A stretch of DNA of 63,011 bases, the filler included, from Octopus bimaculoides (Eukaryota): the NCBI RefSeq assembly GCF_001194135.2. It is 8 parts of 8 records of this genome, joined end to end, with 100 filler letters (N's around TTAATTAATTAA, not from the genome) between each part and the next. Parts side by side here need not be neighbours in the genome. Positions count along the whole stretch, not along the records: positions 1 to 21,991 come from NC_068991.1; 7 more parts are not named here. One strand, given 5' to 3'. Positions 1,150 through 22,035 of the stretch are shown here, piece after piece. Positions within the stretch are counted from its first letter, which is position 1. The number at the start of each line of letters is the position of its first letter. The notes below the pieces were generated by a model. It did no database searches, had not been told where the DNA came from, and worked only from the letters and a program-made list of their open reading frames with translations. A program made the position numbers and the translations under genes.

Positions 1150-1505
1150 AGCAAAAAATTGACCTGGCGGATTGGTTAAGAGGCCGGGCATACGCTTAAT
1201 GTCATTTCTGCCAACTTTGTATTCAGAGTTCAAATTCCACCGAGGTCGACTCTGCCTTGTCCCACAAAATTTTAAAACCTTGTCCCTGTAGCAGAAAGCT
1301 TCTTCTTCTTTTTCTTTTTCTTTATAAGGTGACGAGCTGGCAGAATCGTAAGCACGTTCTGAGTTCAAATTCCGGGGAGGTCGACTTTGCCTTTCATCCT
1401 TTTGGGGTCGATAAATAAAGTACCAGTTGCGTACCGTGGTCGATGCAATCGACTGGCACCCTCTTCCAAAATTCCAGGTCTTGTACCTATAGTAGAAAGG
1501 AGTAT
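1150..1505 (+). mobile_element. Two tandem tRNA-derived SINE copies (family A)
   Basis: B-box-like GAGTTCAAATTCC followed by the conserved GTCGACTTTGCCTTTCATCC...GGGGTCGATAAAATAAGTACC core that recurs many times in the window. Confidence 0.85.
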
Positions 1506-2645: not shown

Positions 2646-3519
2646 TATTCAATAATGTGCCAGACTATTTGAGACTATAACGAGAAAGAGAGAAAGAGAG
2701 AGAGTGAGAGAGAGAGATTGGACTGCTATTTCTAGCAGATCAATGCACAGCGTAGCAGCTCCCCTGTCCGCTTATTGTTGTTGTTGTTGTTATTGTTATT
2801 ATCGTTATTGTTTTTATTTTCATTTTTCATGTTTTCGATGTAATTATTGAGCTTGTTCTGACATAGCCGCTTCCTGATGTATTAATACTTTCGCTACTGT
2901 CATTGATGTTGTTGTTGTTGTTGCTACTACCGTTGTTGATGTCAATATTCTTCAAACAAAATGTCACCAAATTATCGATTACATGCACAGATGCACCTAG
3001 CAGATATTCCTCAAACTACAACCGTTGCTACAACTACTACAGCTACTGCCGTATCTGTTGCTATGGCTACCCGGAACACCAACACCTCATTGCTGGCATC
3101 CACCCCTTATACCCGGTTTGTAGACAATTGCTTCAAACGAACCCACAAGAGACAGCTAATCACATTTTCATATTTCATATCCTTACGTACATAACCACAT
3201 ACATTTACAAACACGTGAGTATATATATGTATATATATGTGTAAAGTCACAAAATACGCATCCAAATTGACACGAACGCGAACGTACATACATATGCACC
3301 CGTATACGCGCGCACATGAGCTCTGTTATATCGTCAGTGATAAAGGGGCGGGGGAAATGGGTACGCAGGTGTACGGTATGTCCCTATGTTTCTAGCCGTT
3401 TGGAAGTCTTACAGCATCTAAATCCCATTTCTTTTATTTACCAGTATACCCATCACGAGCATTGAACGTAATGCCAAGTACCAAATCCATTCAGATTCCG
3501 ATATGTTTCTCTGTGCGTG

Positions 3520-3584
3520 TGTATGTATGTATGTATGTATGTATGTATGTATGTATGTATGTATGTATGTATGTATTTAAATAT

Positions 3585-3618
<34 letters not shown>

Positions 3619-4680
3619 TTTATTACAATAAAGAAGTATGTAATGATCATTATTGACGCCTTATATAGATATAGCTGTGCGTGTGTGCGTGCATGTATGT
3701 ATATATGTATGTACGTATGCATATATGCATATATGTATGTGTGCCTGTACGTACGTACGTACGTACGTATGTATGTATGTATGTATGTATGCATGCATGC
3801 GTGTATGTATGTATGTATGTACGTATGCATGTATGTATGCATGTATGTATGTATGTATGTATGTATGTATGCATGTATGTATGTATGCATGTATGCATGT
3901 ATGTNNNNNNNNNNNNNNNNNNNNNNNNNNNNNNNNNNNNNNNNNNNNNNNNNNNNNNNNNNNNNNNNNNNNNNNNNNNNNNNNNNNNNNNNNNNNNNNN
4001 NNNNNNNNNNNNNNNNNNNNNNNNNNNNNNNNNNNNNNNNNNNNNNNNNNNNNNNNNNNNNNNNNNNNNNNNNNNNNNNNNNNNNNNNNNNNNNNNNNNN
4101 NNNNNNNNNNNNNNNNNNNNNNNNNNNNNNNNNNNNNNNNNNNNNNNNNNNNNNNNNNNNNNNNNNNNNNNNNNNNNNNNNNNNNNNNNNNNNNNNNNNN
4201 NNNNNNNNNNNNNNNNNNNNNNNNNNNNNNNNNNNNNNNNNNNNNNNNNNNNNNNNNNNNNNNNNNNNNNNNNNNNNNNNNNNNNNNNNNNNNNNNNNNN
4301 NNNNNNNNNNGTATGCATGTATGTATGTAAGCATGTATGTATGTATGCATGTATGTATGTATGTATGTACGTATGCATGTATGTATGCATGTATGTATGT
4401 ATGTATGTATGTATGCATGTATGCATGTATGTATGTATGTATGTATGCATGTATGCATGTATGTATGTATGTACGTATGCATGTATGTATGCATGTATGT
4501 ATGTATGTATGTATGCATGTATATATGCATGCATGCATGTATGTATGCAAGTACGTATGTATGCATGTATGTATGTATGTATGCATGTATGTATGTAAGC
4601 ATGTATGTATGTATGCATGTATGTATGTATGTATGCATGCATGTATGTATGTATGCATGTGTGTATGTATGCATGTATGT
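3520..4680. repeat. (GTAT/GCAT)n tetranucleotide microsatellite spanning an N gap
   Basis: Directly visible; gap at 3905-4310; explains the MYVC/HTYI ORFs. Confidence 0.95.
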
Positions 4681-5910
4681 ATATCAAATACAATACAACA
4701 GGGATTCTTGAATCATTAGAATTATGTCCGTTTCTAGAGGAAACTGTGACAATTACCAAACAGGAATTGAAACAGCCTCCGTATATGAAGGGGAGATAAT
4801 CTGGAAAAAAATCAACAGTTCTGCTAAGTTTGACATGCCGTGCAAATAAACAAAGTGAGTAGATTGATAGGTGAAAAGAAAACACTGCTCTTCTCTTACA
4901 CCTCCATCGTGAAATGCACCATCAACCCACCACCACNNNNNNNNNNNNNNNNNNNNNNNNNNNNNNNNNNNNNNNNNNNNNNNNNNNNNNNNNNNNNNNN
5001 NNNNNNNNNNNNNNNNNNNNNNNNNNNNNNNNNNNNNNNNNNNNNNNNNNNNNNNNNNNNNNNNNNNNNNNNNNNNNNNNNNNNNNNNNNNNNNNNNNNN
5101 NNNNNNNNNNNNNNNNNNNNNNNNNNNNNNNNNNNNNNNNNNNNNNNNNNNNNNNNNNNNNNNNNNNNNNNNNNNNNNNNNNNNNNNNNNNNNNNNNNNN
5201 NNNNNNNNNNNNNNNNNNNNNNNNNNNNNNNNNNNNNNNNNNNNNNNNNNNNNNNNNNNNNNNNNNNNNNNNNNNNNNNNNNNNNNNNNNNNNNNNNNNN
5301 NNNNNNNNNNNNNNNNNNNNNNNNNNNNNNNNNNNNNNNNNNNNNNNNNNNNNNNNNNNNNNNNNNNNNNNNNNNNNNNNNNNNNNNNNNNNNNNNNNNN
5401 NNNNNNNNNNNNNNNNNNNNNNNNNNNNNNNNNNNNNNNNNNNNNNNNNNNNNNNNNNNNNNNNNNNNNNNNNNNNNNNNNNNNNNNNNNNNNNNNNNNN
5501 NNNNNNNNNNNNNNNNNNNNNNNNNNNNNNNNNNNNNNNNNNNNNNNNNNNNNNNNNNNNNNNNNNNNNNNNNNNNNNNNNNNNNNNNNNNNNNNNNNNN
5601 NNNNNNNNNNNNNNNNNNNNNNNNNNNNNNNNNNNNNNNNNNNNNNNNNNNNNNNNNNNNNNNNNNNNNNNNNNNNNNNNNNNNNNNNNNNNNNNNNNNN
5701 NNNNNNNNNNNNNNNNNNNNNNNNNNNNNNNNNNNNNNNNNNNNNNNNNNNNNNNNNNNNNNNNNNNNNNNNNNNNNNNNNNNNNNNNNNNNNNNNNNNN
5801 NNNNNNNNNNNNNNNNNNNNNNNNNNNNNNNNNNNNNNNNNNNNNNNNNNNNNNNNNNNNNNNNNNNNNNNNNNNNNNNNNNNNNNNNNNNNNNNNNNNN
5901 CACCACCACC

Positions 5911-5959
<49 letters not shown>

Positions 5960-6479
5960 GTAACGACATCTATAACAGCAACAACTCCATAAATTGAGGC
6001 ACCGGTCGTTGACTTTCTTGTACAGTTCGAGTGGATCATTTCAATTATTATGATTTCAAGTTGAACAGATAATTTAAGACGAAAACAAACGAAAAATAAA
6101 CAATTCTTATACGCGAATACATTGAATTAAATATGGCTGTTGTACAACAGGCATCGGCATAAAAGCTTTGTACGATTCAACAACGTGTATATGCGTACAT
6201 ATACACGTACACATATACACATATACACATATATACACGCACACACACACTGTAGTATATTCTCAAGTCGCTGTTGAAATTGCATCTCGATGTAAATATC
6301 AGTTTAGCAGTTTATCTAATGTGGAAGAGAGGGAACAATATTCAAAATGGCGCGTATATTTAGTAAAATATTCTGTTCTGTTCTATAAACATGTAAAAGA
6401 CAGAGACGTAGCTATGGAGGAAATAGACAGGGAGACGAATAATACTAAACCTAAATACGAGTGCCATTAGTTTATTTTA

Positions 6480-6836: not shown

Positions 6837-7083
6837 AGAGATAAATATTCTAATCTGGAGCTGTTTCTATTGCATAGTTTCAACTTTCTCAGTCAGGCGG
6901 CATATTCGCAGGTCGGCGGGATTGTTTATTTGCAGATTCTATATACTAAAGACAGGCCGGGACGATTTGGTGCAACTTCATTCACATCTGACATCACTCT
7001 ATTTCTCGCTTCCGGGACGATTTCGTTTCGCCTAGATCTGAAGTATATTATGTTCGTAACAATATACGTCTTTGAAGGATCAC

Positions 7084-7795
7084 ATATGGGGAGCCCTATG
7101 GCACACTTACGAGGGTGGCACATANNNNNNNNNNNNNNNNNNNNNNNNNNNNNNNNNNNNNNNNNNNNNNNNNNNNNNNNNNNNNNNNNNNNNNNNNNNN
7201 NNNNNNNNNNNNNNNNNNNNNNNNNNNNNNNNNNNNNNNNNNNNNNNNNNNNNNNNNNNNNNNNNNNNNNNNNNNNNNNNNNNNNNNNNNNNNNNNNNNN
7301 NNNNNNNNNNNNNNNNNNNNNNNNNNNNNNNNNNNNNNNNNNNNNNNNNNNNNNNNNNNNNNNNNNNNNNNNNNNNNNNNNNNNNNNNNNNNNNNNNNNN
7401 NNNNNNNNNNNNNNNNNNNNNNNNNNNNNNNNNNCTGAAGTATATTATGTTCGTAACAATATACGTCTTTGAAGGATCACATATGGGGAGCCCTATGGCA
7501 CACTTACGAGGGTGGCACATAATTGGCGGCACATCATTGGCGGCACATGAGGAGCCCTATGGCACACATACGAGGGAGGCACATCCTAGGTGGCACATCC
7601 TGGGCGGCACATATAGGGAGCCGTATGGGACACTTAGGAAGGTGGCACATCGTTGGCGACACATATGCGGAGCCCTATGGCACACCCTTGGCCCCTGATC
7701 TTTACCAGTAGCTAGCTACTGACCCTTGACCCTTGGCGGCACATATGGGGAGCCCTATGGCACACTTACGAGGGTGGCACATCCATGGCGGCACG
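7084..7795 (+). repeat. GC-rich hierarchical minisatellite
   Basis: GGAGCCCTATGGCACAC at ~7090, 7487, 7551, 7617, 7669 and 7749, interspersed with 14-bp nnTTGGCGGCACAT subunits. Confidence 0.9.
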
Positions 7796-8830: not shown

Positions 8831-10029
8831 GCTTGTTTGTTTGTTCCTGTGCGTGTTGGAATACGTGTGTTTCTACCTGTTTGTGCCTGTGCGGTGGTCG
8901 GGTCGTTTTTACTGACGTAGCTTTTCATCTAAAAATCTTTGAGAAGCTGTCACTTGCAGGCTGCCATCTTTTGTCTAGAATGGTCAATACCAGAGGCTAA
9001 CATGTCAGATGTCATGTCGACGAGGTTCTTTAAACAATGTACCTTTTTCCTTCTTTATAACATTAACTAAGAAATAAAGCCGAGCTAAAGATACACGCAC
9101 AATTCTTTATAGATGCAGTTATTTCATTCTGAATTTTATTATTATTATTATTATTATCATTATTATTATTATTATTATTATGATTGTTATTATTATTTTG
9201 ACAAGGAGTGTGTGTCAATGCATGTATGTGCTTGTATGGTTAAAGATGTTGGCGGTTGTTTTATTACGAAGATATGTATGCGAAGGTTTATGTAACATAG
9301 AATATAGAATTCTTAATAGAATATCTGTTTAGTTTCGATTCAGTATGCTTATGTATATATATATATATATANNNNNNNNNNNNNNNNNNNNNNNNNNNNN
9401 NNNNNNNNNNNNNNNNNNNNNNNNNNNNNNNNNNNNNNNNNNNNNNNNNNNNNNNNNNNNNNNNNNNNNNNNNNNNNNNNNNNNNNNNNNNNNNNNNNNN
9501 NNNNNNNNNNNNNNNNNNNNNNNNNNNNNNNNNNNNNNNNNNNNNNNNNNNNNNNNNNNNNNNNNNNNNNNNNNNNNNNNNNNNNNNNNNNNNNNNNNNN
9601 NNNNNNNNNNNNNNNNNNNNNNNNNNNNNNNNNNNNNNNNNNNNNNNNNNNNNNNNNNNNNNNNNNNNNNNNNNNNNNNNNNNNNNNNNNNNNNNNNNNN
9701 NNNNNNNNNNNNNNNNNNNNNNNNNNNNNNNNNNNNNNNNNNNNNNNNNNNNNNNNNNNNNNNNNNNNNNNNNNNNNNNNNNNNNNNNNNNNNNNNNNNN
9801 NNNNNNNNNNNNNNNNNNNNNNNNNNNNNNNNNNNNNNNNNNNNNNNNNNNNNNNNNNNNNNNNNNNNNNNNNNNNNNNNNNNNNNNNNNNNNNNNNNNN
9901 NNNNNNNNNNNNNNNNNNNNNNNNNNNNNNNNNNNNNNNNNNNNNNNNNNNNNNNNNNNNNNNNNNNNNNNNNNNNNNNNNNNNNNNNNNNNNNNNNNNN
10001 NNNNNNNATATATATATATATATATATAT

Positions 10030-10190
10030 ATACGACGGATTTCTTCCAGTTCCCGTCTAACAAATCTACTCACAAGACTTTGGTTGGCCCGAGGCTAGAG
10101 TAGAAGATACTTGGTCATGGTGCCACGCATGGGGACTGAACCCGGAACCATGTGGTTGGTAAGCAAGCTTATTACTACATATATAGTTTT
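10030..10190 (-). mobile_element. SINE family B head
   Basis: Matches the family B consensus; abuts (TA)n and a gap. Confidence 0.85.
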
Positions 10191-10309
10191 ACGTTGGTTT
10201 TTTTCAGTGAAGTAATTTATATCACATACACACACACACACGCACACACGCGTATACGCACACACACGTATACGCACACACACGTATACGCACACACACG
10301 TATACGCAC

Positions 10310-10650
10310 ACTTCATTTTTTTCTTGTTTTAGTCATTAGCGTGCGGTCATGCTGGGGCACCGCCGTGAACGACTTAATCGAAATCATATCTGATCGTTTT
10401 GGCAAACCGGCATGTTACAGGGACGTAAGCAAGCCAACAGCGGACGTAAGCAAGAACACAGACACACAAACATGAACATACATACACAACAGGATTCTGC
10501 ACGGTTTCCGTCAACCAAAGTCACTCACAAGGCATTGGTCAGCTCAACTTTATTGCAGTAATACTTGCCTAATGTATCAAACAGTGGGACTGAACCCACA
10601 ACCATCTGCTCACAAAGCGACCGTCTTAACCGCGCAGCGATGACTGCTCC
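10310..10650 (-). mobile_element. Diverged near-full SINE family B
   Basis: Both tail and head are recognisable. Confidence 0.7.
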
Positions 10651-11612: not shown

Positions 11613-11830
11613 GGAAGTGAGCCGTGGATCGGGCGAAATGCTTAGCGGTATTTCGTCTGCCATTACGTTCTGAGTTCAAATTCCGCCGAGGTCGACTTTG
11701 CCTTTCATCCTTTCGGGGGTCGATTAAATAAGTATTAGTTACGCACTGGGGTCGATATAATTGACTTAATCCGTTTGTCTGTCTTTGTTTGTCCCCCTCT
11801 ATGTTTAGCCCCTTGTGGGCAATAAAGAAA
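11612..11830 (+). mobile_element. SINE family A, long-tail subfamily
   Basis: Core plus the tail TTTGTCTGTCTTTGTTTGTCCCC..GCCCCTTGTGGGCAATAAAG, nearly identical to 32933-33163. Confidence 0.9.
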
Positions 11831-11869
11831 CTAAAAACGAAACATATATATCGAATTCAAGTTTTGTCA

Positions 11870-12045
11870 CAAGGCCAGCAATTTCAACGGAAGGGATTGT
11901 CGAATGCATCAATCTCAGTGCTCAACTGGTATTTATTTTCTCGACGACAAAATGATAAAAGGCGAACTCCACCTCGGCGGAATTTGAACTAAGAAAGTAA
12001 AGACGGACGAAATGCCGCTAACGGTTCTGCCAAATTGCCGTCTTC
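11870..12045 (-). mobile_element. SINE family A
   Basis: Reverse-complement core (GAATTTGAACT, CTGGTATTTATTTT). Confidence 0.75.
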
Positions 12046-12166: not shown

Positions 12167-12605
12167 AAGGCGGCGAACTGGCAGAATCGTTAGCACTCCG
12201 GGCAAAATGCTTGACGGCATTTTGTTCATCTTTACGTTCTGAGTTCAAATCCCACCAGCATCAACTTTACATTTCATCCTTTCGGGTTGGATAAAATATG
12301 TACCAGTTGATCACTAGAGTCCATGTAATCGACTTAATCCCTACCCTGAAATAACTGGCCTTGTGCTAAAAACTGAAACTAATATTTCATCATTTTAAGG
12401 TAACGAAATTTTAGAATCGTTAGCACGCCGAACGAAATGCTTAGCGGTATTTCGCCCGTTTTAGGGCTTTATGCTTAATAAAGAAATCGGTATTTCGTCC
12501 GTCTATATTTCCTGAGTTCAAATTCCGCTGAGGTCGACTTTACCTTTCGTCTTTTCGGAGTCAATAAAATAAGTACCATTCGAGCACATTGGGGTCGATG
12601 TAAAG
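12167..12605 (+). mobile_element. Two tandem SINE family A copies
   Basis: Two cores; a 20-bp direct repeat (12148-12167 and 12379-12398) flanks the first copy. Confidence 0.85.
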
Positions 12606-12614
12606 ACCAACTTC

Positions 12615-13124
12615 TTTCAGGACGGTTGTCGACCTCTCGAACGAATGAAAACATCATGAAAATTAGATGAAATGATCTTGGGAGACCGTCATCACACAAT
12701 TGACCATATGACTGGTGTGTCCTGGTCCTGCTGCTAACGAATTTTGAGCGTCGAATTGCAAATGTAAAGAGTTGCAGTAAAATTTGTGCCTCGCTTGCTC
12801 ACGGAAGATCAAAAGTAGTCACGGCTGAATGCGTGTTGTGAACTCAAAGAACAGTTGGAAGTTGATGCGGACCTTCTTGCGGACCTGATGACGAAAGCTG
12901 GCGCTACAGAATATATAGATGTGGAAGAGGCGAAGAAAAGAGAAACCACGGAGGCATTAGAAGGCATAAAATCGTAATAGTTCCAGCACTGCTTCGAGCA
13001 ATGGAAGACGCGTCTGGACCGAGGCATTGCATCAAATGGAGAATAATTGGAAAGCGATCAAAATGTAAAACTAAGTGAATAAAATAATATTGCAAAATTC
13101 CGGTTTCTTTTGGGTACTCTTTCC
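12615..13124 (+). mobile_element. Internally deleted mariner remnant
   Basis: SGRLSTSRTNENI...RVAVKFVPRLLTEDQK joined to FQHCFEQWKTRLDRGIASNGE; TIR-like AAAATTCCGGTTTCTTTTGGGTAC. Confidence 0.85.
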
Positions 13125-13756
13125 TATATATAATAAGCGGTTGCGTTTCTTGTTTCTATGGCATAGCAGGACATATTTAGCAAACAAGAGCTTTTTCGCT
13201 CGGTTTTGAATAAGACGGTACGCTATAGAAAGCGGTTCTTCCTGCAGATATCTAACAATATCACTGTGTATCGTCTGGCTTTGAACAAGGCGATATACTG
13301 TAAATAGAGGCTCTTCAGGAAGTTTGTTAACAATGGAGTTTGTCTGTTTATCATTATGTACTGTTTATTTCGCAGTCTTTCCCCAAATATAACAAACTGA
13401 AGTAGTAAGCATGTTTTTGAAAGCGCACAAAAGCACAAGCTAAAAGCCAGTAGATGCAGAATTGAAGAGCTAACAATAACACAAAAATGTCTATCTCATA
13501 ATTATTTCATTTCTCGCAATGTGAAACCAGACTAGTAAAAAATGGAGAATTTTGTTTTAAGACCTAAAGTAGAAAGACACACACGCGCCATTACCTTTGT
13601 GCATCACTATGTATGTATGTATGTATGCATGTACGTATGTATGCATGTATGAATGTATTTATGTATGTACGTGTGTGTATAAATGTATGTATGCATTTAT
13701 GTATGTATGTATGTGTGTATGAATACAAGTATTATTTATGTATGTATGTCATTATT

Positions 13757-14003
13757 CGGTTGAGGGAATTTGGATACGAAGTCGTTCCCCACCCAATTTA
13801 TTCCTCAGACCTTTCTCCTACTGACTACTACTTTTTTCAAGCACCTTGATGCTTTCCTGTGAGAGAAGGAGTTAAAAAAAAAAATCAAACTGATGGCTTA
13901 AAGTGCATTCAAAGGGTTCATGAGCTCCAGAACTCCTGATTTTTACGTAACCGGAATAAACAAACTTGTAACAGGTTGGCAAAATTGCATTGATTGTAAT
14001 GCT
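13757..14003 (+). mobile_element. Mariner (Hsmar1/cecropia-like) transposase C-terminal remnant
   Basis: LREFGYEVVPHPIYSSDLSPTDYYFF...SRTPDFYVTGINKLVTGWQNCIDCN, containing the YSPDL motif and third catalytic D. Confidence 0.9.
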
Positions 14004-14655
14004 ACGAAGCCCAGTATACCCATCATGACTACCCGTCTGATAAGGGTACACCAGGCACATACATCACAACCATATGTGCGTGACATGGTGATCTCATATC
14101 AATATAAACAGCGCATGACCTCGCAGGTGGGGCTCAGTTAGAATTTTCTTCAGGTCGAGTAGCCCATCCCGCTCAAAAAGTCCCTGAATAAGGTTTGTTT
14201 AAGGATGTTGAGCAAAACACCCATGTTTCCAATGGTGAATTATTCAAACCCCAAAGAATTCCTCTCAACACATGGCTATNNNNNNNNNNNNNNNNNNNNN
14301 NNNNNNNNNNNNNNNNNNNNNNNNNNNNNNNNNNNNNNNNNNNNNNNNNNNNNNNNNNNNNNNNNNNNNNNNNNNNNNNNNNNNNNNNNNNNNNNNNNNN
14401 NNNNNNNNNNNNNNNNNNNNNNNNNNNNNNNNNNNNNNNNNNNNNNNNNNNNNNNNNNNNNNNNNNNNNNNNNNNNNNNNNNNNNNNNNNNNNNNNNNNN
14501 NNNNNNNNNNNNNNNNNNNNNNNNNNNNNNNNNNNNNNNNNNNNNNNNNNNCTGTAGCCCATCTTTTATACCAAGACAAAACAATGTACATGATAACACT
14601 TCCAATCAATTAAGATCAGAAGCCATGAGAGCCACTGCCTGGTACTGCATCCGGG

Positions 14656-14657
<2 letters not shown>
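14003..14657 (-). mobile_element. Family C non-coding retroelement (AAT-flanked), spans a gap
   Basis: Matches 17517-17808 and 20956-21991; 5' end abuts (ATT)n at 14658-14725. Confidence 0.85.
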
Positions 14658-14716
<59 letters not shown>

Positions 14717-16298: not shown

Positions 16299-16334
<36 letters not shown>

Positions 16335-16453
16335 TTATATACTAATACACACACACACTCATGCATATAAACATATATATATACACGTGAGAAAAGGTAC
16401 AAATAGTCCTCGTCATCATCGTAATTATAATCATCATCATCATTATCGTCACC

Positions 16454-16485
<32 letters not shown>

Positions 16486-16839
16486 CATCATCATTATCGT
16501 CGTCGTCATCGTCGTCGTCTACATCACTGGCTGCTGTATCAGTACTACCAGCCTTAGGAACAAGAGACCTGGCCCCTTTTCCTTCAGATTCCTTACTTCT
16601 TTTCACACCTTGCGTCATCCTATCCCTCTCTATTAATTGTTAATTCCCTGAGGGGTTCGTTATAACACGTCCCTTAATTCTCCCTAATTATCCTTTATAC
16701 TTCTACCGGATATTGGAATTTTAAAGTTTCAAAATATTTCCTACAGGGTTTCTATTTTACGAATTTTATTATATCATGGGGCCGAGTGGGAGGAGGTTTG
16801 GGAGCGTGAAGGATTTGATTTGCTTTTTTCTTAACGTCT

Positions 16840-17405
16840 TTTAAGCCAACGTCATCATCATCATCAGCCTCCTCTTCATCATCATCATAATCATCCTCAC
16901 CATCATCATCACAGTCATCACCGTCACCGACGTCGTCGTCGTCATCATCGTCATCACCATCATCATTATCATCACTGTCTTCATTACCTTCTTCCTCTTC
17001 CTCCTCCTCCTCCTCCTCCTCCATATCCTTCTCAGCATCATTATCGTCACCATGTTCTCTGTAATTTCAATTGTAATCAACCCCACCGTCAAAGTCATAG
17101 TCATCATGGACGTCATCGGCGCCATCGTCATCTTCCTCTTCTTCTTCTTCCACTCCCCCCTCCTCCTCCTCCTCCTCCTCCATATCCTTCTCAGCATCAT
17201 TATCGTCACCATGTTCTCTGTAATTTCAATTGTAATCAACCCCACCGTCAAAGTCATAGTCATCATGGACGTCATNNNNNNNNNNCCTCCTCCTCCTCCC
17301 CTCCTCATCATTGTCATTCTCGTCGTCTTCGCCATCACCCGCATTGTTGTCTTCTTCTTCTTCTTCTTCTTCTTCTTCTTCTTCTTCTTCTTCTTCTTCT
17401 TCTTC

Positions 17406-17451
<46 letters not shown>

Positions 17452-17470
17452 ACATCCTCCTCATCATCAT
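16840..17470. repeat. Mixed CAT/CTC/CTT trinucleotide low-complexity block with a ~156-bp tandem duplication
   Basis: ~17010-17120 is repeated at ~17165-17275. Confidence 0.9.
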
Positions 17471-17516
17471 CAAATTGCTGGCCTTGTGCTTTTAGTAGAA
17501 AGAATTATTAATATTG

Positions 17517-17808
17517 TTGAGTGAGAGAGCAGTGCATGCCATCAAAGTGACACTGGGGTAAAATATACGAAGCTCAATATACCCATCAAGACTACCCGTT
17601 TGATAAGGGTACACCAGGCACATGCATAACAACCATACCATATGTGCGCATAACATTGCAGGTGGGGACCCAGTTAGAATTTTCTTCAGGTCGAGTAGCC
17701 CATCCCGCTCAAACGGTGTTTGAAAAAGGGTTGTTTAAGGATGTTGGATGAAACCCCCCTGTTTCCAGTGGTGAATTATTCAAATCCCAAAGAATTCATC
17801 TCAACACA
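17517..17808 (-). mobile_element. Family C element, 5'-truncated
   Basis: TTGAGTGAGAGAGCAGTGCATGCCATCAAAG end with degenerate ATT tail. Confidence 0.85.
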
Positions 17809-17884
17809 CTTACTTTACATAGCGCATTGTGAAACAGAATTTAGACATTTAATAGAAATCTATGTTCCAGTAAATTACCATTGC

Positions 17885-18135
17885 AAAGAGATAATGCGTT
17901 TGAATCAAGCATCCCGCCTTTTATTTTTTCTTCTTAACTAGCAGACTAATTAGTGAAAACTAATATAATCTAATACTAATTATGACTAATGGTGACACAA
18001 TATATTAAAACTTCCTAATTGACTAATAGTATGTTCGCCACAAACAACACTTGATGTTGTCTCGTAACTTGTTTGTGGATGACGTCATTGTTTCGTCACG
18101 TGATGCCAAAACTGAACACAGTTTTAGTAAGTACT
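17885..18135 (+). promoter_or_regulatory. ACTAAY-array / CRE / E-box / GTAAGT module, copy 1
   Basis: 5 ACTAAT, TTCGCCACAA, TGACGTCA, GTCACGTGAT, GTAAGT at 18127; function is inferred only. Confidence 0.4.
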
Positions 18136-18408
18136 TATTAAATCTTGAAATCTCTTGGTGGTGCATAGTCAGAATCGTTAGAAATTCGGTCAAAAAGCCA
18201 GGTGGTATTATCTACTGTTCTTTAGAGCCCCAGATCAAAATTCTAGTCTTGTGTTAATATTGTACAGAATTGAAGGCACAGAATTTTGGCACAAGGCCAG
18301 CAATTTCGAGGTTGGCTGGAGGTCGATAGCATCGATCCCCCGTGTTTTAGGGAATCGACACGCAGCAATGTCAATAATGATTGCAGGACTCGGCTATAGC
18401 GGTGATAT

Positions 18409-18473
<65 letters not shown>

Positions 18474-18490
18474 TTAGTAGGGGTGGCTCT

Positions 18491-18522
<32 letters not shown>

Positions 18523-18813
18523 GNNNNNNNNNNNNNNNNNNNNNNNNNNNNNNNNNNNNNNNNNNNNNNNNNNNNNNNNNNNNNNNNNNNNNNNNNNNNN
18601 NNNNNNNNNNNNNNNNNNNNNNNNNNNNNNNNNNNNNNNNNNNNNNNNNNNNNNNNNNNNNNNNNNNNNNNNNNNNNNNNNNNNNNNNNNNNNNNNNNNN
18701 NNNNNNNNNNNNNNNNGTGCATAGATGAGGAGGACTGCAAAAACAAGAAGAAGAAGAAGAAGAAGAAGAAGAACAACAACAACAACAACAACAAGAACAA
18801 CAACAGCAACAGC

Positions 18814-18867
<54 letters not shown>

Positions 18868-18876
18868 AATAATGTT

Positions 18877-19615
18877 GCACAGCTCAAGAACAAGCGTTAA
18901 GGACCAAATATGTGAAGTGCAAAATAGACAACACTACCGACAGCAGAATGTGTGGTGAGAGGGGTGAAACGGTATGGCAATTCGTTAGCAAGTGCCCGAA
19001 ATTGGCACAACGTGAAAATAAAAGACGCCATGACAATGTGGCAAGAATGATCCATTGGGATCTCTGTGGAAATTATGGCCTACAAAGAGCAAAGACGTGG
19101 TATTAGCAAACCCCAGAAAGAATCACTGAGAATGAGATTTGCAAAATCGTGTGGGATGCACTGGTCCAGTGTGATCACCTGACCAGACATCGGAAACCGG
19201 ACATTGTTGTGGTGTGTAAAAGAGGAATAACATGCATGATAATCGACATAGAATTGACCCGGTGAGAACAGGATCATTGTGAAAGAAGAAGGAAAACTAA
19301 ACAACTATAGCGATTCGAAGTGGGAAAGATGAAGATTGTGATCAATGAAGAGAGTAGACATGATACCAACAATAATTGACACACTTGGAAGCATCAGCAC
19401 TCAACTACCAGCATGGCCGAGAAAGATTGGTGCAAGTGTGAAGGTAGAACACCTACAAATATCAGCACTGCTTGGAGCTGCAGGAATTCTTCGTAGGGTT
19501 CTAGAAGCATCACCAGTAAACAAGTGTCACCTTAGTATGCTGGCTGTGGACAGCTGACACTTTCCATCATATGCAACAAAATAAGCTGTGAGTTTTCATC
19601 GAAAATAATAATAAT

Positions 19616-19682
<67 letters not shown>

Positions 19683-19688
19683 TAATAA
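18877..19688 (+). mobile_element. R4/Dong-like non-LTR retrotransposon 3' part (Zn knuckle, RLE endonuclease, 3' UTR, (AAT)n tail)
   Basis: AQEQALRT..RMCGERGETVWQFVSKCP..RRHDNVA..RHRKPDIVVV..ALLGAAGILRRVL; stops and frameshifts. Confidence 0.9.
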
Positions 19689-20324
19689 TGACAGCACCAT
19701 AGCACATCTCCAGCATTAGAAGCTGTGCAAAGACAATAAAATATTAATTATTAATATTTGAAATCTTTCCAGAAGGGCAGCTTGGGAGAGGTGGGGGATG
19801 AGTCGATTACAACGACCCCCGTGTTCAACTGGTACTTGTTTNNNNNNNNNNNNNNNNNNNNNNNNNNNNNNNNNNNNNNNNNNNNNNNNNNNNNNNNNNN
19901 NNNNNNNNNNNNNNNNNNNNNNNNNNNNNNNNNNNNNNNNNNNNNNNNNNNNNNNNNNNNNNNNNNNNNNNNNNNNNNNNNNNNNNNNNNNNNNNNNNNN
20001 NNNNNNNNNNNNNNNNNNNNNNNNNNNNNNNNNNNNNNNNNNNNNNNNNNNNNNNNNNNNNNNNNNNNNNNNNNNNNNNNNNNNNNNNNNNNNNNNNNNN
20101 NNNNNNNNNNNNNNNNNNNNNNNNNNNNNNNNNNNNNNNNNNNNNNNNNNNNNNNNNNNNNNNNNNNNNNNNNNNNATATATATATACATATATGCTTAT
20201 GTATATATATTATGTATGTGTGTGAGTGTAGCAAGCATAAAAAAAGCAAGGAAACCCTTTAAATATGAGATTTATACGTATATACCTATGATGTTATTTG
20301 TCAATAACATCATGGTTATCCCTC

Positions 20325-20585
20325 GAAGGTAATGCTGAGTTAGAATGAAAACGCCGCCTGTTCTTTAATTAAAAAACTAACTAGCAGTCTGTCTCACTAA
20401 CTAATACAAATTAATGCTGTATATGACTAACACTGACTAATTATACTAAACATTCTAGCTGACTAACTGTCTGTCTATTTCGCCACAGACTTCACACATA
20501 CAAAGTTTTTCTTGTAACTTGAGTCGATGACGTCATTGCTGTGTCACGTGATGCATAAACTCGGTACAGAATGTATTAGTAAGTA
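20325..20585 (+). promoter_or_regulatory. ACTAAY-array / CRE / E-box / GTAAGT module, copy 2
   Basis: 7 ACTAA, TTTCGCCACAG (AG at 20487-20488), TGACGTCA, GTCACGTGAT, GTAAGT at 20579. Confidence 0.4.
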
Positions 20586-20955
20586 TTTCACACTCGTGGT
20601 TTATCACGCCATAAAATAGGTATTCCCAAGGGGTCATTTGATGTGTTTGATCCCCCGTCAACTGCATAATATTGCACACGGTCAATTTTTAGATGCATCC
20701 GGGTTACAGGTTCCAATAACTAATGGATTTTTGACCTTGTACGGCTTGGTCAGCTCTTGAATTTTTTTTGCCTTGTTTCCTTAAATTATCGAATTTTTAC
20801 TTACACACGTAGGATTATCCGTGTAACACGTAATTATTGAATGTGACATTAAAATCTTTAAATAATTCATGTTAGATATTGTTTTAGTTCCTCTGTATAT
20901 TGAGTAAGTGCGCCCCAGTGGAAATAATGATATCAATAATACTAGTAATAATAAT

Positions 20956-21308
20956 ATGCAGTACTAGACAGTGGCTCTCATGGCTTCTGATCTTAACTGA
21001 TAGGAAGTGTTATCATGTTCATTGTTTTGTCTTGGTATAAAAGATGGGTTACAGCAAATATTCTGCTCAATACTCTTTTACTTGTTTCAGTCATTTGACT
21101 GCTGCCATATAGGAGCACCGCCTTTAGTCGAAGAAATCGACCCCAGGACTTATTCTTTGTAAGCCTAGTACTTTTTCTATCGGTCTCTTTTGCCGAACCG
21201 CTAAGTGACGTGGCCGTAAACACAACAGCATCAGTTGTCAAGCGATGTTGGGGGACAAACACAGACACACAAACATATACACACATGCATATACATACAT
21301 ACATACAT

Positions 21309-21357
<49 letters not shown>

Positions 21358-21953
21358 TACGCCGGGCCTCTTTCAGCTTCCGTCTACCAAATCCACTCAC
21401 AAGGATTTGGTCGGCCCGAGGTTATAGTAGAAGACACTAGCCCAAAGTGCCACGCAGTGGGACTGAACCCGGAACCATGTGGTTCGTCAGCAAGCTACTT
21501 ACCACGCAGCCACTCCTGCGCCTACAGATTTGCTGGTCAGTTGCTTGACCTTAACCAGTTGAGCATGTCCCTTGGTGGCTGGCGATATGTGCATCTCTGA
21601 TCACGAGCAGAAGTAGTGGGGGAGCATCATAGCCATGTGCGTTGAAGAATTCTTTAGGGTTTGGATAACTCACCTTTGGAAACATGGGTGTTTTTTACAA
21701 CATTTTTAAACCACCCTTATTCAAGGACCTTTTCAGCGGGATAGGCTACTCAACCTGAAGAAAATTCTGACTGGGCCCCCACCTGCGTGGTCATGCGCTG
21801 TTTATCTTGATATGAGATCACCATGTCGCGCACATATGGTTGTGATGCATGTGCCTGGTGTACCCTTATCAGACGAGTAGTCATGATGGGTATACTGGAC
21901 TTCGTATATTTTACCCCAGTGTCACTTTGATGGCATGCTCTTTCCTCTCACTC

Positions 21954-21991
<38 letters not shown>
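20956..21991 (+). mobile_element. Near-full family C element interrupted by a family B SINE
   Basis: Left part 20956-21073, right part 21524-21954, then (AAT)n; AAT repeats also precede the 5' end. Confidence 0.9.
21074..21523 (-). mobile_element. Full-length SINE family B with internal (CA)/(TA)n
   Basis: tRNA-like head, CORE-like TTTGGGCTAGTGTCTTCTACTAT, internal microsatellite and tail. Confidence 0.92.
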
Positions 21992-22035
21992 NNNNNNNNN
22001 NNNNNNNNNNNNNNNNNNNNNNNNNNNNNNNNNNN

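What the first reader, a model, noticed from the sequence alone, without database searches (positions are those of the whole stretch)
17885..20585. Two diverged paralogous modules: ACTAAY array, 3' splice-like site, CRE, E-box, GTAAGT
The modules at 17885-18135 and 20325-20585 are same-strand and ~2.45 kb apart. Spacers have diverged but motif order is kept: TAATGC..GAAT..CCGCCT, TAACTAGCAG, 5-7 ACTAA(Y) in ~100 bp, TTCGCCACA(G/A), GTAACTTG, GATGACGTCATTG, GTCACGTGATGC, TTA|GTAAGTA. ACUAAY is the branch-point/SF1 and QKI-STAR binding consensus, TGACGTCA is the CREB site and TCACGTGA is a bHLH-ZIP E-box. In copy 2 the AG..GT interval is exactly 90 nt (20489-20578) with stops in all frames. Possible readings are tandem alternative promoters/first exons, a STAR-regulated poison exon, or an unknown TE end.
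Basis: partly seen in the sequence, partly recalled or inferred. Interest (0 to 1): 0.7.

Follow-up and report, generated by a model that had tools for sequence, protein, structure and literature searches.

The report
Old duplicated non-coding regulatory-like module
Two decayed copies of a 255-bp non-coding octopus DNA segment keep the same pair of transcription-factor sites, which suggests a duplicated gene switch or transposon remnant; the evidence for a specially regulated exon is weak.

Summary
Positions 17885-18136 and 20325-20588 are homologous on the same strand: 66-67% identity, blastn E 6e-24, and no third copy in the piece.

- The two gaps lie in the spacer, so the modules sit on different contigs. 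Their spacing and orientation are scaffold-level inferences.
- The spacer is almost entirely SINE fragments, a truncated LINE tail, microsatellites and N. The copies may once have been adjacent.
- The non-random content is a perfect CRE palindrome 4 bp from a USF-type E-box, intact in both copies, plus an ACTAA array.
- The array is decaying: only 3 of 9 unit positions are shared. It reads equally well as AP-1-type TGACTAA sites and TAAT cores.
- Splice evidence is weak. The donor is unexceptional (4.7 of 12.9 bits), and the acceptor AG exists only in copy 2.
- No RNA family, tRNA or stable fold was found.

The best reading is a local duplication about 50 My old of a cis-regulatory-type module, with partial constraint on the CRE and E-box. 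A decayed interspersed repeat or LTR pair is not excluded, because no cephalopod genome could be searched. Interest is low.

The parts
17885..18136 (+). Module copy 1 (about 252 bp)
   Evidence: blastn against copy 2, E 6e-24. nhmmer E 3.8e-73. Flanks are not homologous.
20325..20588 (+). Module copy 2 (about 264 bp)
17945..18027 (+). ACTAAT array of copy 1: 5 ACTAA units, 2 of them TGACTAAT, plus TAATTA cores
   Evidence: TRF finds only a weak period-10 signal.
20376..20467 (+). ACTAA(Y) array of copy 2: 7 ACTAA units, 3 of them TGACTAAY
   Evidence: No TRF array.
18078..18090 (.). CRE, copy 1: GATGACGTCATTG, with the 10-bp palindrome ATGACGTCAT
   Evidence: TGACGTCA occurs only twice in the piece, against 0.38 expected.
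18095..18106 (.). USF/MiT-type E-box, copy 1: GTCACGTGATGC, 4 bp after the CRE
   Evidence: TCACGTGA occurs only twice, against 0.28 expected. It matches the USF consensus TCACGTGR (PMC1779564).
20526..20538 (.). CRE, copy 2, identical 13-mer
20543..20554 (.). E-box, copy 2, identical 12-mer with the same 4-bp spacing
18123..18133 (+). Conserved right-edge island TTAGTAAGTA, copy 1 (donor-like TTA|GTAAGTA)
   Evidence: The PWM score is 4.66 of 12.88 bits, which is unexceptional.
20575..20585 (+). Conserved right-edge island TTAGTAAGTA, copy 2
20460..20488 (+). Acceptor-like site in copy 2 only: CTGACTAAC, a pyrimidine-rich tract, then CACAG. Copy 1 has CACAA at 18038-18042.
20489..20578 (+). 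90-nt AG..GT interval of copy 2, with stops in all frames. It contains the CRE and the E-box.
18157..18337 (+). SINE family A fragments inserted 20 nt after copy 1. The SINE 5' head starts at about 18157.
18880..19690 (+). 5'-truncated LINE 3' end (degenerate ORF) with a (TAA)n tail, inside the spacer
   Evidence: translation. E 4.5e-57 to RT-associated C-terminal proteins, some carrying PF13966.
19737..19841 (-). SINE family A fragment, cut by gap 2

Best explanation
An ancient local, probably tandem, duplication produced two copies of a roughly 255-bp non-coding segment in an octopus genome. Later SINE, LINE and microsatellite insertions pushed the copies about 2.4 kb apart.

The segment is a cis-regulatory-type module that works at the DNA level. 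A decaying array of AP-1-type TGACTAA sites and TAAT cores (the 'ACTAAY' array) is followed by a perfect CRE palindrome (ATGACGTCAT). A USF/MiT-type E-box (GTCACGTGAT) lies 4 bp further on. bZIP (CREB/ATF, AP-1) and bHLH-ZIP factors would bind these sites and drive or enhance transcription from a nearby start. That start is possibly at or just beyond the conserved right edge, TTAGTAAGTA.

Shown here:
- the homology and the existence of only two copies in the piece;
- sharp ends of the unit;
- a spacer filled with transposons and simple repeats;
- non-chance occurrence of the two palindromes, both intact, with identity clumped into islands.

Inferred:
- that the copies arose by local duplication rather than transposition;
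- that they were once adjacent;
- that the CRE and E-box are under constraint;
- that they act as a promoter or enhancer.

The ancestral segment may itself have come from a transposon.
For: 1. Homology is unambiguous and confined to two same-strand copies. Both ends are sharp, with flanks not alignable (P 0.4-0.8).
2. Of the 2190-bp spacer, 528 bp are N and about 1420 bp are SINE fragments, a LINE 3' end with a (TAA)n tail, or microsatellites. Only about 240 bp are unassigned.
3. TGACGTCA and TCACGTGA are expected 0.38 and 0.28 times per piece. A pair within 20 bp has a chance of about 2e-4 per 18 kb, so the ancestral segment carried a real site pair.
4. Pairwise identity at aligned bases is 73%, giving a JC distance of 0.34. 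Yet both 8-mers, and the full 13-mer and 12-mer around them, are intact in both copies. Under uniform decay that is about 0.73^16, or 0.006. Identity is clumped overall: P 0.0006 by shuffle and 0.002-0.06 by simulation.
5. The motif identities are documented. TGACTAA is an AP-1 site (PMC6562732). TCACGTGR is the USF consensus, and both it and the CRE TGACGTCA peak near start sites in human promoters (PMC1779564).
6. Two copies within 2.5 kb, with none in the other roughly 17.5 kb, fits local duplication better than independent insertions of a dispersed family.
7. A six-frame translation of both modules hit nothing among 5.8 billion proteins. A SINE-derived ORF from the same window did hit Octopus bimaculoides models. 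This is weak evidence against a high-copy family.
8. The RNA-level readings lack support.
Against: - There are no expression, accessibility or cross-species data, and no cephalopod genome was searchable. Copy number is therefore unknown.
- Octopus genomes are 43-66% repeats, including many unknown families (PMC13282606). A 255-bp unit with sharp ends in TE-rich DNA is what a repeat looks like.
- The clumping statistic is only moderately significant, and the longest runs alone are not (P 0.33).
- Outside the islands the copies have decayed as much as the oldest SINE copies nearby.
- There is no CpG or GC enrichment, no TATA box, and no gene in the piece that the module could serve.
- Spacing and orientation rest on scaffolding across two gaps.
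Confidence: 0.48

Rival explanations
1. The modules are two neutrally decaying copies of an uncharacterised interspersed repeat. Candidates are the LTR pair of a degraded TRIM-like or LTR element, two solo LTRs, or another short non-autonomous element. The element's own promoter would explain the bZIP sites and the E-box. The conserved islands would be survivors by chance.
For: - The unit is a discrete 255-265 bp with sharp ends, present as direct repeats about 2.2 kb apart.
- LTR U3 regions typically pack AP-1, CRE and E-box sites.
- The neighbourhood is saturated with SINE, LINE and composite repeats.
- Octopus genomes are 43-66% repeats, with many unknown families.
- The longest exact runs are within neutral expectation (P 0.33 and 0.18).
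- ACTAA units are lost independently in the two copies.
Against: - There are no TG..CA termini at the homology ends.
- Copy 1 is not followed by a primer-binding site. What follows is 20 nt and then the 5' head of a SINE.
- There is no polypurine tract before copy 2.
- The interior holds no gag or pol remnant, only an unrelated LINE tail.
- There are no pol III boxes, tRNA-like head or tail and no terminal inverted repeats.
- There is no third copy in 18 kb and no trace among octopus protein models, unlike the SINE control.
- Survival of both palindromes has a probability of about 0.006 under uniform decay.
Confidence: 0.28
2. The modules are alternative non-coding exons: first exons with their own promoters, or a 90-nt poison or cassette exon. 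Their splicing would be controlled by STAR/SF1 proteins binding the ACUAAY array upstream of the acceptor.
For: - Copy 2 has a textbook acceptor: CTGACTAAC lies 22 nt before AG, with a pyrimidine-rich tract and no intervening AG. GTAAGTAT follows exactly 90 nt downstream.
- The intron side of the donor, GTAAGTA, is conserved in both copies at the edge of homology.
- 11 of the 14 ACTAAY hexamers on the + strand of the piece lie in the modules, all in one orientation.
- ACUAAY is the QKI response element (PMC9786888).
Against: - The acceptor AG is missing in copy 1 (CACAA).
- The donor's exon side (TTA) is poor. It scores 4.66 of 12.88 bits, and about 170 GT sites in the piece score as well or better.
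- The 'exon' is no better conserved than the 'intron', apart from two DNA palindromes that make more sense as protein-binding DNA.
- Only 3 of 9 ACTAA positions are shared.
- A first exon starting after the E-box would be only 23-27 nt.
- No flanking exons or gene are in the piece, and no transcript data are available.
Confidence: 0.12
3. The modules are duplicated genes for a structured non-coding RNA, or hammerhead-bearing repeats of a Penelope-like element.
For: None beyond the duplication itself. Penelope-like elements are common in octopus and have direct repeats about 2-3 kb apart.
Against: - Rfam finds no match in either module even at E up to 1.
- Fold z-scores are -1.4, +1.2, -1.6 and +0.1 on the two strands of the two copies.
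- There is no tRNA.
Confidence: 0.02

Closest known systems
Promoter-proximal CRE plus USF-type E-box composites, bound by CREB/ATF and USF or MiT/TFE-family factors
   Same: A perfect TGACGTCA and a TCACGTGR lie a few bp apart. Both motif classes peak just upstream of start sites in human promoters (PMC1779564). AP-1-type TGACTAA sites lie upstream (PMC6562732).
   Different: No start site, gene or expression evidence exists here. The organism is a cephalopod, where the positional preferences of these motifs are unknown. The module is present as two decayed copies in transposon-rich DNA.
Arrays of alternative first exons, each with its own promoter (own knowledge: BDNF 5' exons, clustered protocadherin variable exons)
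   Same: Repeated same-strand units carry promoter-type motifs and are followed by a GTAAGT donor-like site.
   Different: There are only two units. The putative exon would be tiny or non-existent. No common acceptor exon is seen, and the donor is statistically unexceptional.
LTR pairs of small non-autonomous LTR elements (TRIM) and solo LTRs
   Same: Direct repeats of about 250 bp with clustered transcription-factor sites bracket a short interior that later insertions inflated.
   Different: TG..CA ends, a primer-binding site, a polypurine tract, a target-site duplication and gag/pol remnants are all absent or undetectable.
QKI/STAR response elements and the SF1 branch-point motif (ACUAAY)
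   Same: The hexamer is dense and strand-specific, and in copy 2 one unit sits at branch-point distance from an AG.
   Different: The units are not positionally conserved. Five are part of TGACTAAY. Transcription is unproven, and the acceptor is missing in copy 1.
Tandem promoter monomers of mouse L1 5' ends (own knowledge)
   Same: Repeated promoter-like units of about 200-260 bp.
   Different: The units are not contiguous with each other or with a LINE 5' end. The LINE piece between them is an unrelated 3' fragment.

Membership tests
LTR retrotransposon / TRIM (LTR pair) | Two direct terminal repeats on one strand | tested here: met
   Same-strand copies. Orientation across two assembly gaps is scaffold-level only.
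LTR retrotransposon / TRIM (LTR pair) | 5'-TG...CA-3' termini at the repeat ends | tested here: not met
   Homology starts around (G/A)TAATGC and ends at GTAAGTA(C/T)TT. No shared TG or CA lies at the boundaries.
LTR retrotransposon / TRIM (LTR pair) | A primer-binding site directly after the 5' repeat and a polypurine tract directly before the 3' repeat | tested here: not met
   Copy 1 is followed by 20 nt and then the TGGTGG... head of a family A SINE, homologous to other copies in the window. Only GAAGG precedes copy 2.
LTR retrotransposon / TRIM (LTR pair) | Target-site duplication flanking the whole element | tested here: inconclusive
   The boundaries are uncertain by a few bp, and 27% divergence would erase a 4-6 bp duplication.
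LTR retrotransposon / TRIM (LTR pair) | gag/pol remnants in the interior (autonomous elements only) | tested here: not met
   The interior holds SINE fragments, microsatellites and a non-LTR LINE tail.
SINE | A tRNA-, 5S- or 7SL-like head with pol III boxes, and a simple-repeat or A-rich tail | tested here: not met
   ARAGORN finds none. Rfam finds nothing in the modules at E up to 1. No tail lies at either end.
Cassette or poison exon | An acceptor AG with a branch point and pyrimidine tract, plus a donor GT, kept in both paralogues | tested here: not met
   Present in copy 2. Copy 1 has CACAA instead of CACAG, and the only nearby AG lies 2-3 nt after a TGACTAAT.
Cassette or poison exon | Spliced transcripts that include the interval | not testable with these tools
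   No cephalopod transcript or genome data could be reached.
Promoter with first exon | A mapped transcription start, and a donor spliced to a downstream exon | not testable with these tools
   No CAGE or RNA-seq data. Only 1.4 kb lies downstream of copy 2 in the piece, and all of it is repeats.
Promoter with first exon | A cluster of promoter-proximal factor sites beyond chance | tested here: met
   The CRE and the USF-type E-box are expected 0.38 and 0.28 times per piece but lie 4 bp apart (8 bp between the TGACGTCA and TCACGTGA cores) in both copies.
QKI/STAR response element | An ACUAAY core with a nearby UAAY half-site in RNA | tested here: inconclusive
   The sequence pattern is abundant. 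Whether it is ever RNA, or is bound, cannot be tested here.
Known RNA families (Rfam 15), including the hammerheads of Penelope-like elements | A covariance-model match | tested here: not met
   Nothing in 17885-18136 or 20325-20588 at E up to 1.

The most novel reading that the evidence does not exclude
The two modules are anciently duplicated alternative non-coding exons of a cephalopod gene, possibly a neural one. Each would have its own activity-type promoter (AP-1, CRE, E-box). An upstream ACUAAY array would recruit SF1 or a Quaking-like STAR protein to gate inclusion of the exon. That would be a paired transcription and splicing switch kept for tens of millions of years.
Probability: 0.07. 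Interest if true: 0.5.

Novelty: new member of a known kind. Interest (0 to 1): 0.2.

Why it matters
If the CRE and E-box pair is truly constrained in both copies, this is a small and easily testable example of a duplicated cis-regulatory module in an octopus genome. Almost no promoters or enhancers have been dissected there. It would also give a concrete site for asking whether CREB/USF-type logic works near cephalopod start sites.

If it proves to be a repeat family, it only adds one entry to an already very large repeat catalogue. Neither outcome changes current understanding.

Tried and rejected
- **Exact look-up of ORFs.** Ten ORFs spanning the modules and their neighbours were looked up in the 15-billion-protein collection, in the hope of fetching gap-free contigs of the same locus. 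None is on record.
- **Pattern scans.** GATGACGTCATTGN{2,8}GTCACGTGATGC gave 0 hits in JGI metagenomes, IMG/VR and GTDB genomes.
- **Control for those scans.** A 23-mer from the window's commonest SINE also gave 0 hits in the metagenomes. Those nulls are therefore uninformative, because the collections hold no DNA of this organism.
- **Sampling the genome through the LINE fragment.** The best protein hits are only 48% identical and come from other organisms. Their loci L001-L003 share no DNA with the window.
- **Module translations.** A six-frame translation of both modules scored nothing at E up to 10 against 5.8 billion proteins. The SINE control did hit Octopus bimaculoides entries.
- **RNA checks.** Rfam at E up to 1, ARAGORN and RNA folding on both strands gave nothing.
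- **Minisatellite test.** TRF found only a weak period-10 signal in copy 1.
- **Pfam on degenerate TE fragments.** No hits.
- **Extension of homology.** Homology does not extend into either flank, nor into unassigned spacer pieces.
- **Rejected readings.**
  - CpG island (o/e 0.86-1.06 against 0.80 for the piece).
  - Spliced-leader RNA gene, because the 'exon' is not conserved and there is no Sm site.
  - Helitron or MITE end, because there is no CTRR end, hairpin or terminal inverted repeat.
  - One large element bounded by the inverted repeats at 17504-17809 and 21637-21968. Those are copies of an unrelated composite repeat that is also present at 14003-14690.
Full report
**What is there.** The piece is AT-rich, gap-ridden eukaryotic DNA. 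It has ten N runs within the piece; an eleventh, at 21992-22035, is the artificial linker. It is packed with microsatellites, SINE copies and transposon remnants. An ORF read across one of its SINE-like repeats matches 'uncharacterized proteins' of Octopus bimaculoides at 67-88% identity.

Positions 17885-18136 and 20325-20588 are homologous on the same strand. blastn gives 67.3% identity over 269 columns, E 6e-24. A global alignment gives 181 matches in 274 columns. A profile built from the two copies finds only those two places on either strand (E 4e-73 and 1e-79, next best 5.6). The 90-nt AG..GT interval of copy 2, with stops in all frames, is also correct.

**Gaps.** Both assembly gaps inside the finding (18524-18716 and 19842-20176) lie in the spacer, not in the modules. 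Gap 1 is bordered by (GTT)n on the left and unique sequence followed by (GAA)n(CAA)n on the right. Gap 2 is bordered by a SINE fragment cut mid-element and by (TA)n. No reading frame is involved, so frame continuity does not matter. What matters is that the two modules sit on different contigs, so '2.45 kb apart, same strand' is a scaffold-level statement. At 66% identity the copies cannot be an allelic or assembly duplicate.

**Boundaries and spacer.** Homology stops sharply at both ends. The 60-75 bp upstream flanks, the downstream flanks and the unassigned spacer pieces do not align better than shuffles (P 0.4-0.8), with one marginal AT-rich match at P 0.01. The family A SINE copy begins with its 5' head 20 nt after copy 1.

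The rest of the 2190-bp spacer consists of:
- further SINE fragments;
- (GAT)n, (GTT)n, (GAA)n, (CAA)n and (TA)n tracts;
- a 5'-truncated LINE 3' end at 18880-19590 with a (TAA)n tail, whose degenerate ORF hits RT-associated C-terminal proteins at E 4.5e-57, some with PF13966;
- 528 N.

Only about 240 bp are unaccounted for. The two copies could therefore have been adjacent before these insertions.

**Age.** At aligned bases p = 0.273, giving a JC distance of 0.34. I used the clock from the O. vulgaris repeat study, where JC 0.2 from consensus corresponds to about 56 My (PMC13282606). At 0.17 per lineage this gives about 48 My. That is older than the O. vulgaris/O. bimaculoides split of 13-33 My quoted in the same paper. 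Both copies should therefore have orthologues in other Octopus species, which is a clean test.

**What is non-random.**
1. *ACTAA density.* There are 5 and 7 ACTAA per 100 bp against 0.16 expected, and no other window reaches 3. Of the 14 ACTAAY on the + strand, 11 are in the modules, as are all 5 TGACTAAY.
2. *The site pair.* TGACGTCA and TCACGTGA are expected 0.38 and 0.28 times in the whole piece. Each occurs only in the modules. The conserved 13-mer GATGACGTCATTG and 12-mer GTCACGTGATGC that contain them lie 4 bp apart in both copies. By my arithmetic, the chance of such a pair within 20 bp is about 2e-4 per 18 kb.
3. *Clumped identity.* Exact runs are 13, 12, 10, 10, 9, 9, 8 and 8. The longest runs alone are ordinary (P 0.33; top two P 0.18). 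The 79 nt held in runs of 8 or more are exceeded in 0.06% of column shuffles. They are exceeded in 0.2-6% of simulated neutral histories with indels, re-aligned and conditioned on the same identity. Under uniform decay, survival of both 8-mers in both copies has a probability of about 0.73^16, or 0.006.

The evidence for site-specific constraint is real but moderate.

**What is not special.**
- The donor-like TTA|GTAAGTA is perfect on the intron side but poor on the exon side. A rough 9-position matrix, using human-like frequencies from my own knowledge, gives 4.66 of 12.88 bits. About 170 GT sites in the piece score as well or better.
- The acceptor in copy 2 is textbook: CTGACTAAC lies 22 nt before AG with a pyrimidine-rich tract. 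Copy 1 has CACAA there and no usable AG.
- Only 3 of the 9 ACTAA positions are shared. Two are private to copy 1 and four to copy 2. That is what independent loss from a richer ancestral array predicts.
- TRF sees at most a faint 10-bp period.
- Neither strand of either copy folds better than shuffles (z -1.4, +1.2, -1.6, +0.1).
- Rfam at E up to 1 and ARAGORN find nothing in the modules.
- There is no CpG or GC enrichment.

**Reading the array.** The same letters contain TGACTAA, a documented AP-1 site (PMC6562732), five times. They also contain TAATTA or CTAAT homeodomain-type cores. The array sits directly upstream of two DNA palindromes that are classical bZIP and bHLH-ZIP sites. TCACGTGR is the USF consensus, and both it and the CRE peak near start sites in human promoters (PMC1779564). 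A DNA-level reading therefore explains the whole module with one idea. The RNA-level reading needs an exon that one copy cannot make.

**Best explanation (confidence about 0.5).** This is an old local, probably tandem, duplication of a cis-regulatory-type segment. The copies were later separated by transposon and microsatellite insertions, and the CRE and E-box pair has been kept by selection in both. Proximity, same orientation, absence of a third copy in 18 kb, and absence of any LTR, SINE or MITE hallmark favour local duplication over transposition. If the module is a promoter, the expected start lies roughly 30-60 bp past the CRE. That is at or just beyond the conserved right-edge island, which would then mark the start region rather than a splice donor. 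This last point is inference only.

**Main rival (about 0.28).** The modules are two neutrally decaying copies of an uncharacterised repeat or LTR pair. Sharp ends, the repeat-rich setting and the 43-66% repeat content of octopus genomes keep this alive. The missing TG..CA ends, primer-binding site, polypurine tract and gag/pol remnants, together with the survival of both palindromes, count against it.

**Other rivals.** The exon/STAR reading gets about 0.12. A structured RNA gets about 0.02.

**Limits.** The decisive test is copy number and conservation in cephalopod genomes, and it could not be run.
- Pattern scans of JGI metagenomes, IMG/VR and GTDB genomes found nothing.
- A control 23-mer from the window's commonest SINE also found nothing, so those nulls carry no weight.
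- Exact-ORF look-ups failed.
- LINE homologues came from unrelated organisms.
- The one informative contrast is weak. Translated modules hit nothing among 5.8 billion proteins, whereas the SINE control hit Octopus bimaculoides models.

**Verdict.** The feature is real and was accurately described. It is most likely a duplicated regulatory-type module, or otherwise a repeat relic. The exotic elements of the interpretation (STAR-regulated poison exon, paired first exons) are weakly supported. It is a new member of a known kind and of low interest unless cross-species or transcript data show otherwise.

Noticed in passing
window 7038-7124 and 7435-7521: Two 87-bp stretches that are 100% identical lie on either side of gap 7125-7434. 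These redundant gap flanks are almost certainly an assembly artefact, so the gap may be spurious or negative in length.
   Followed up: no
window 14003-14690 (+), 20923-21968 (-), 17504-17809 (+): A composite repeat of about 1 kb is present twice in opposite orientation at 87-89% identity. A truncated third copy ends 75 bp upstream of module 1. The two modules therefore lie between inverted copies that are 78% identical. Because the repeat also occurs elsewhere without a module, the arrangement looks coincidental.
   Followed up: partly
window 18880-19690 (+): A 5'-truncated LINE 3' end with frameshifts and stops. Its C-terminal domain has a CCHC-like motif and a PD..D/ExK-like motif, and it ends in (TAA)n. 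The best protein hits are 48% identical (E 4.5e-57), some with PF13966. From memory it resembles Dong/R4-type elements, which are abundant in O. vulgaris. The family assignment was not tested.
   Followed up: partly
window 1353-1497, 2426-2656, 11630-11775, 11856-12021 (-), 12168-12400, 12488-12603, 18157-18337, 19737-19841 (-): At least eight copies or fragments of one SINE-like family, 65-84% identical to one another. A second family lies at 1662-1813, 10008-10181, 10476-10650 and 21335-21524.
   Followed up: partly
window 16852-17275 and 7478-7794: A tandem repeat with a period of about 159 bp (78% identity) is embedded in acidic-codon-like trinucleotide tracts. A second tandem repeat has a period of about 130-180 bp. 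The long D/E-rich ORFs in 16300-17500 are products of these simple repeats and are not genes.
   Followed up: no
window 3500-4700, 6175-6260, 10165-10345, 13570-13750, 21200-21385: There are dozens of sub-threshold Rfam matches (mir-297, mir-466, mir-1277, sno_ZL1 and others). All are far below their gathering scores and all lie in (TG)n/(TA)n/(CA)n low-complexity DNA. They are false positives.
   Followed up: yes
window about 12600-13100 (+) and 13830-14000 (+): Translations look like degenerate mariner/Tc1-type transposase remnants, for example a ...PHPIYSSDLSPTDYYFF... stretch. Pfam gave no hit at E up to 0.01, so this is unverified.
   Followed up: partly
window 20326-20334: The left edge of copy 2 reads GAAG|GTAATG. 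It shows how easily donor-like sites arise here.
   Followed up: no
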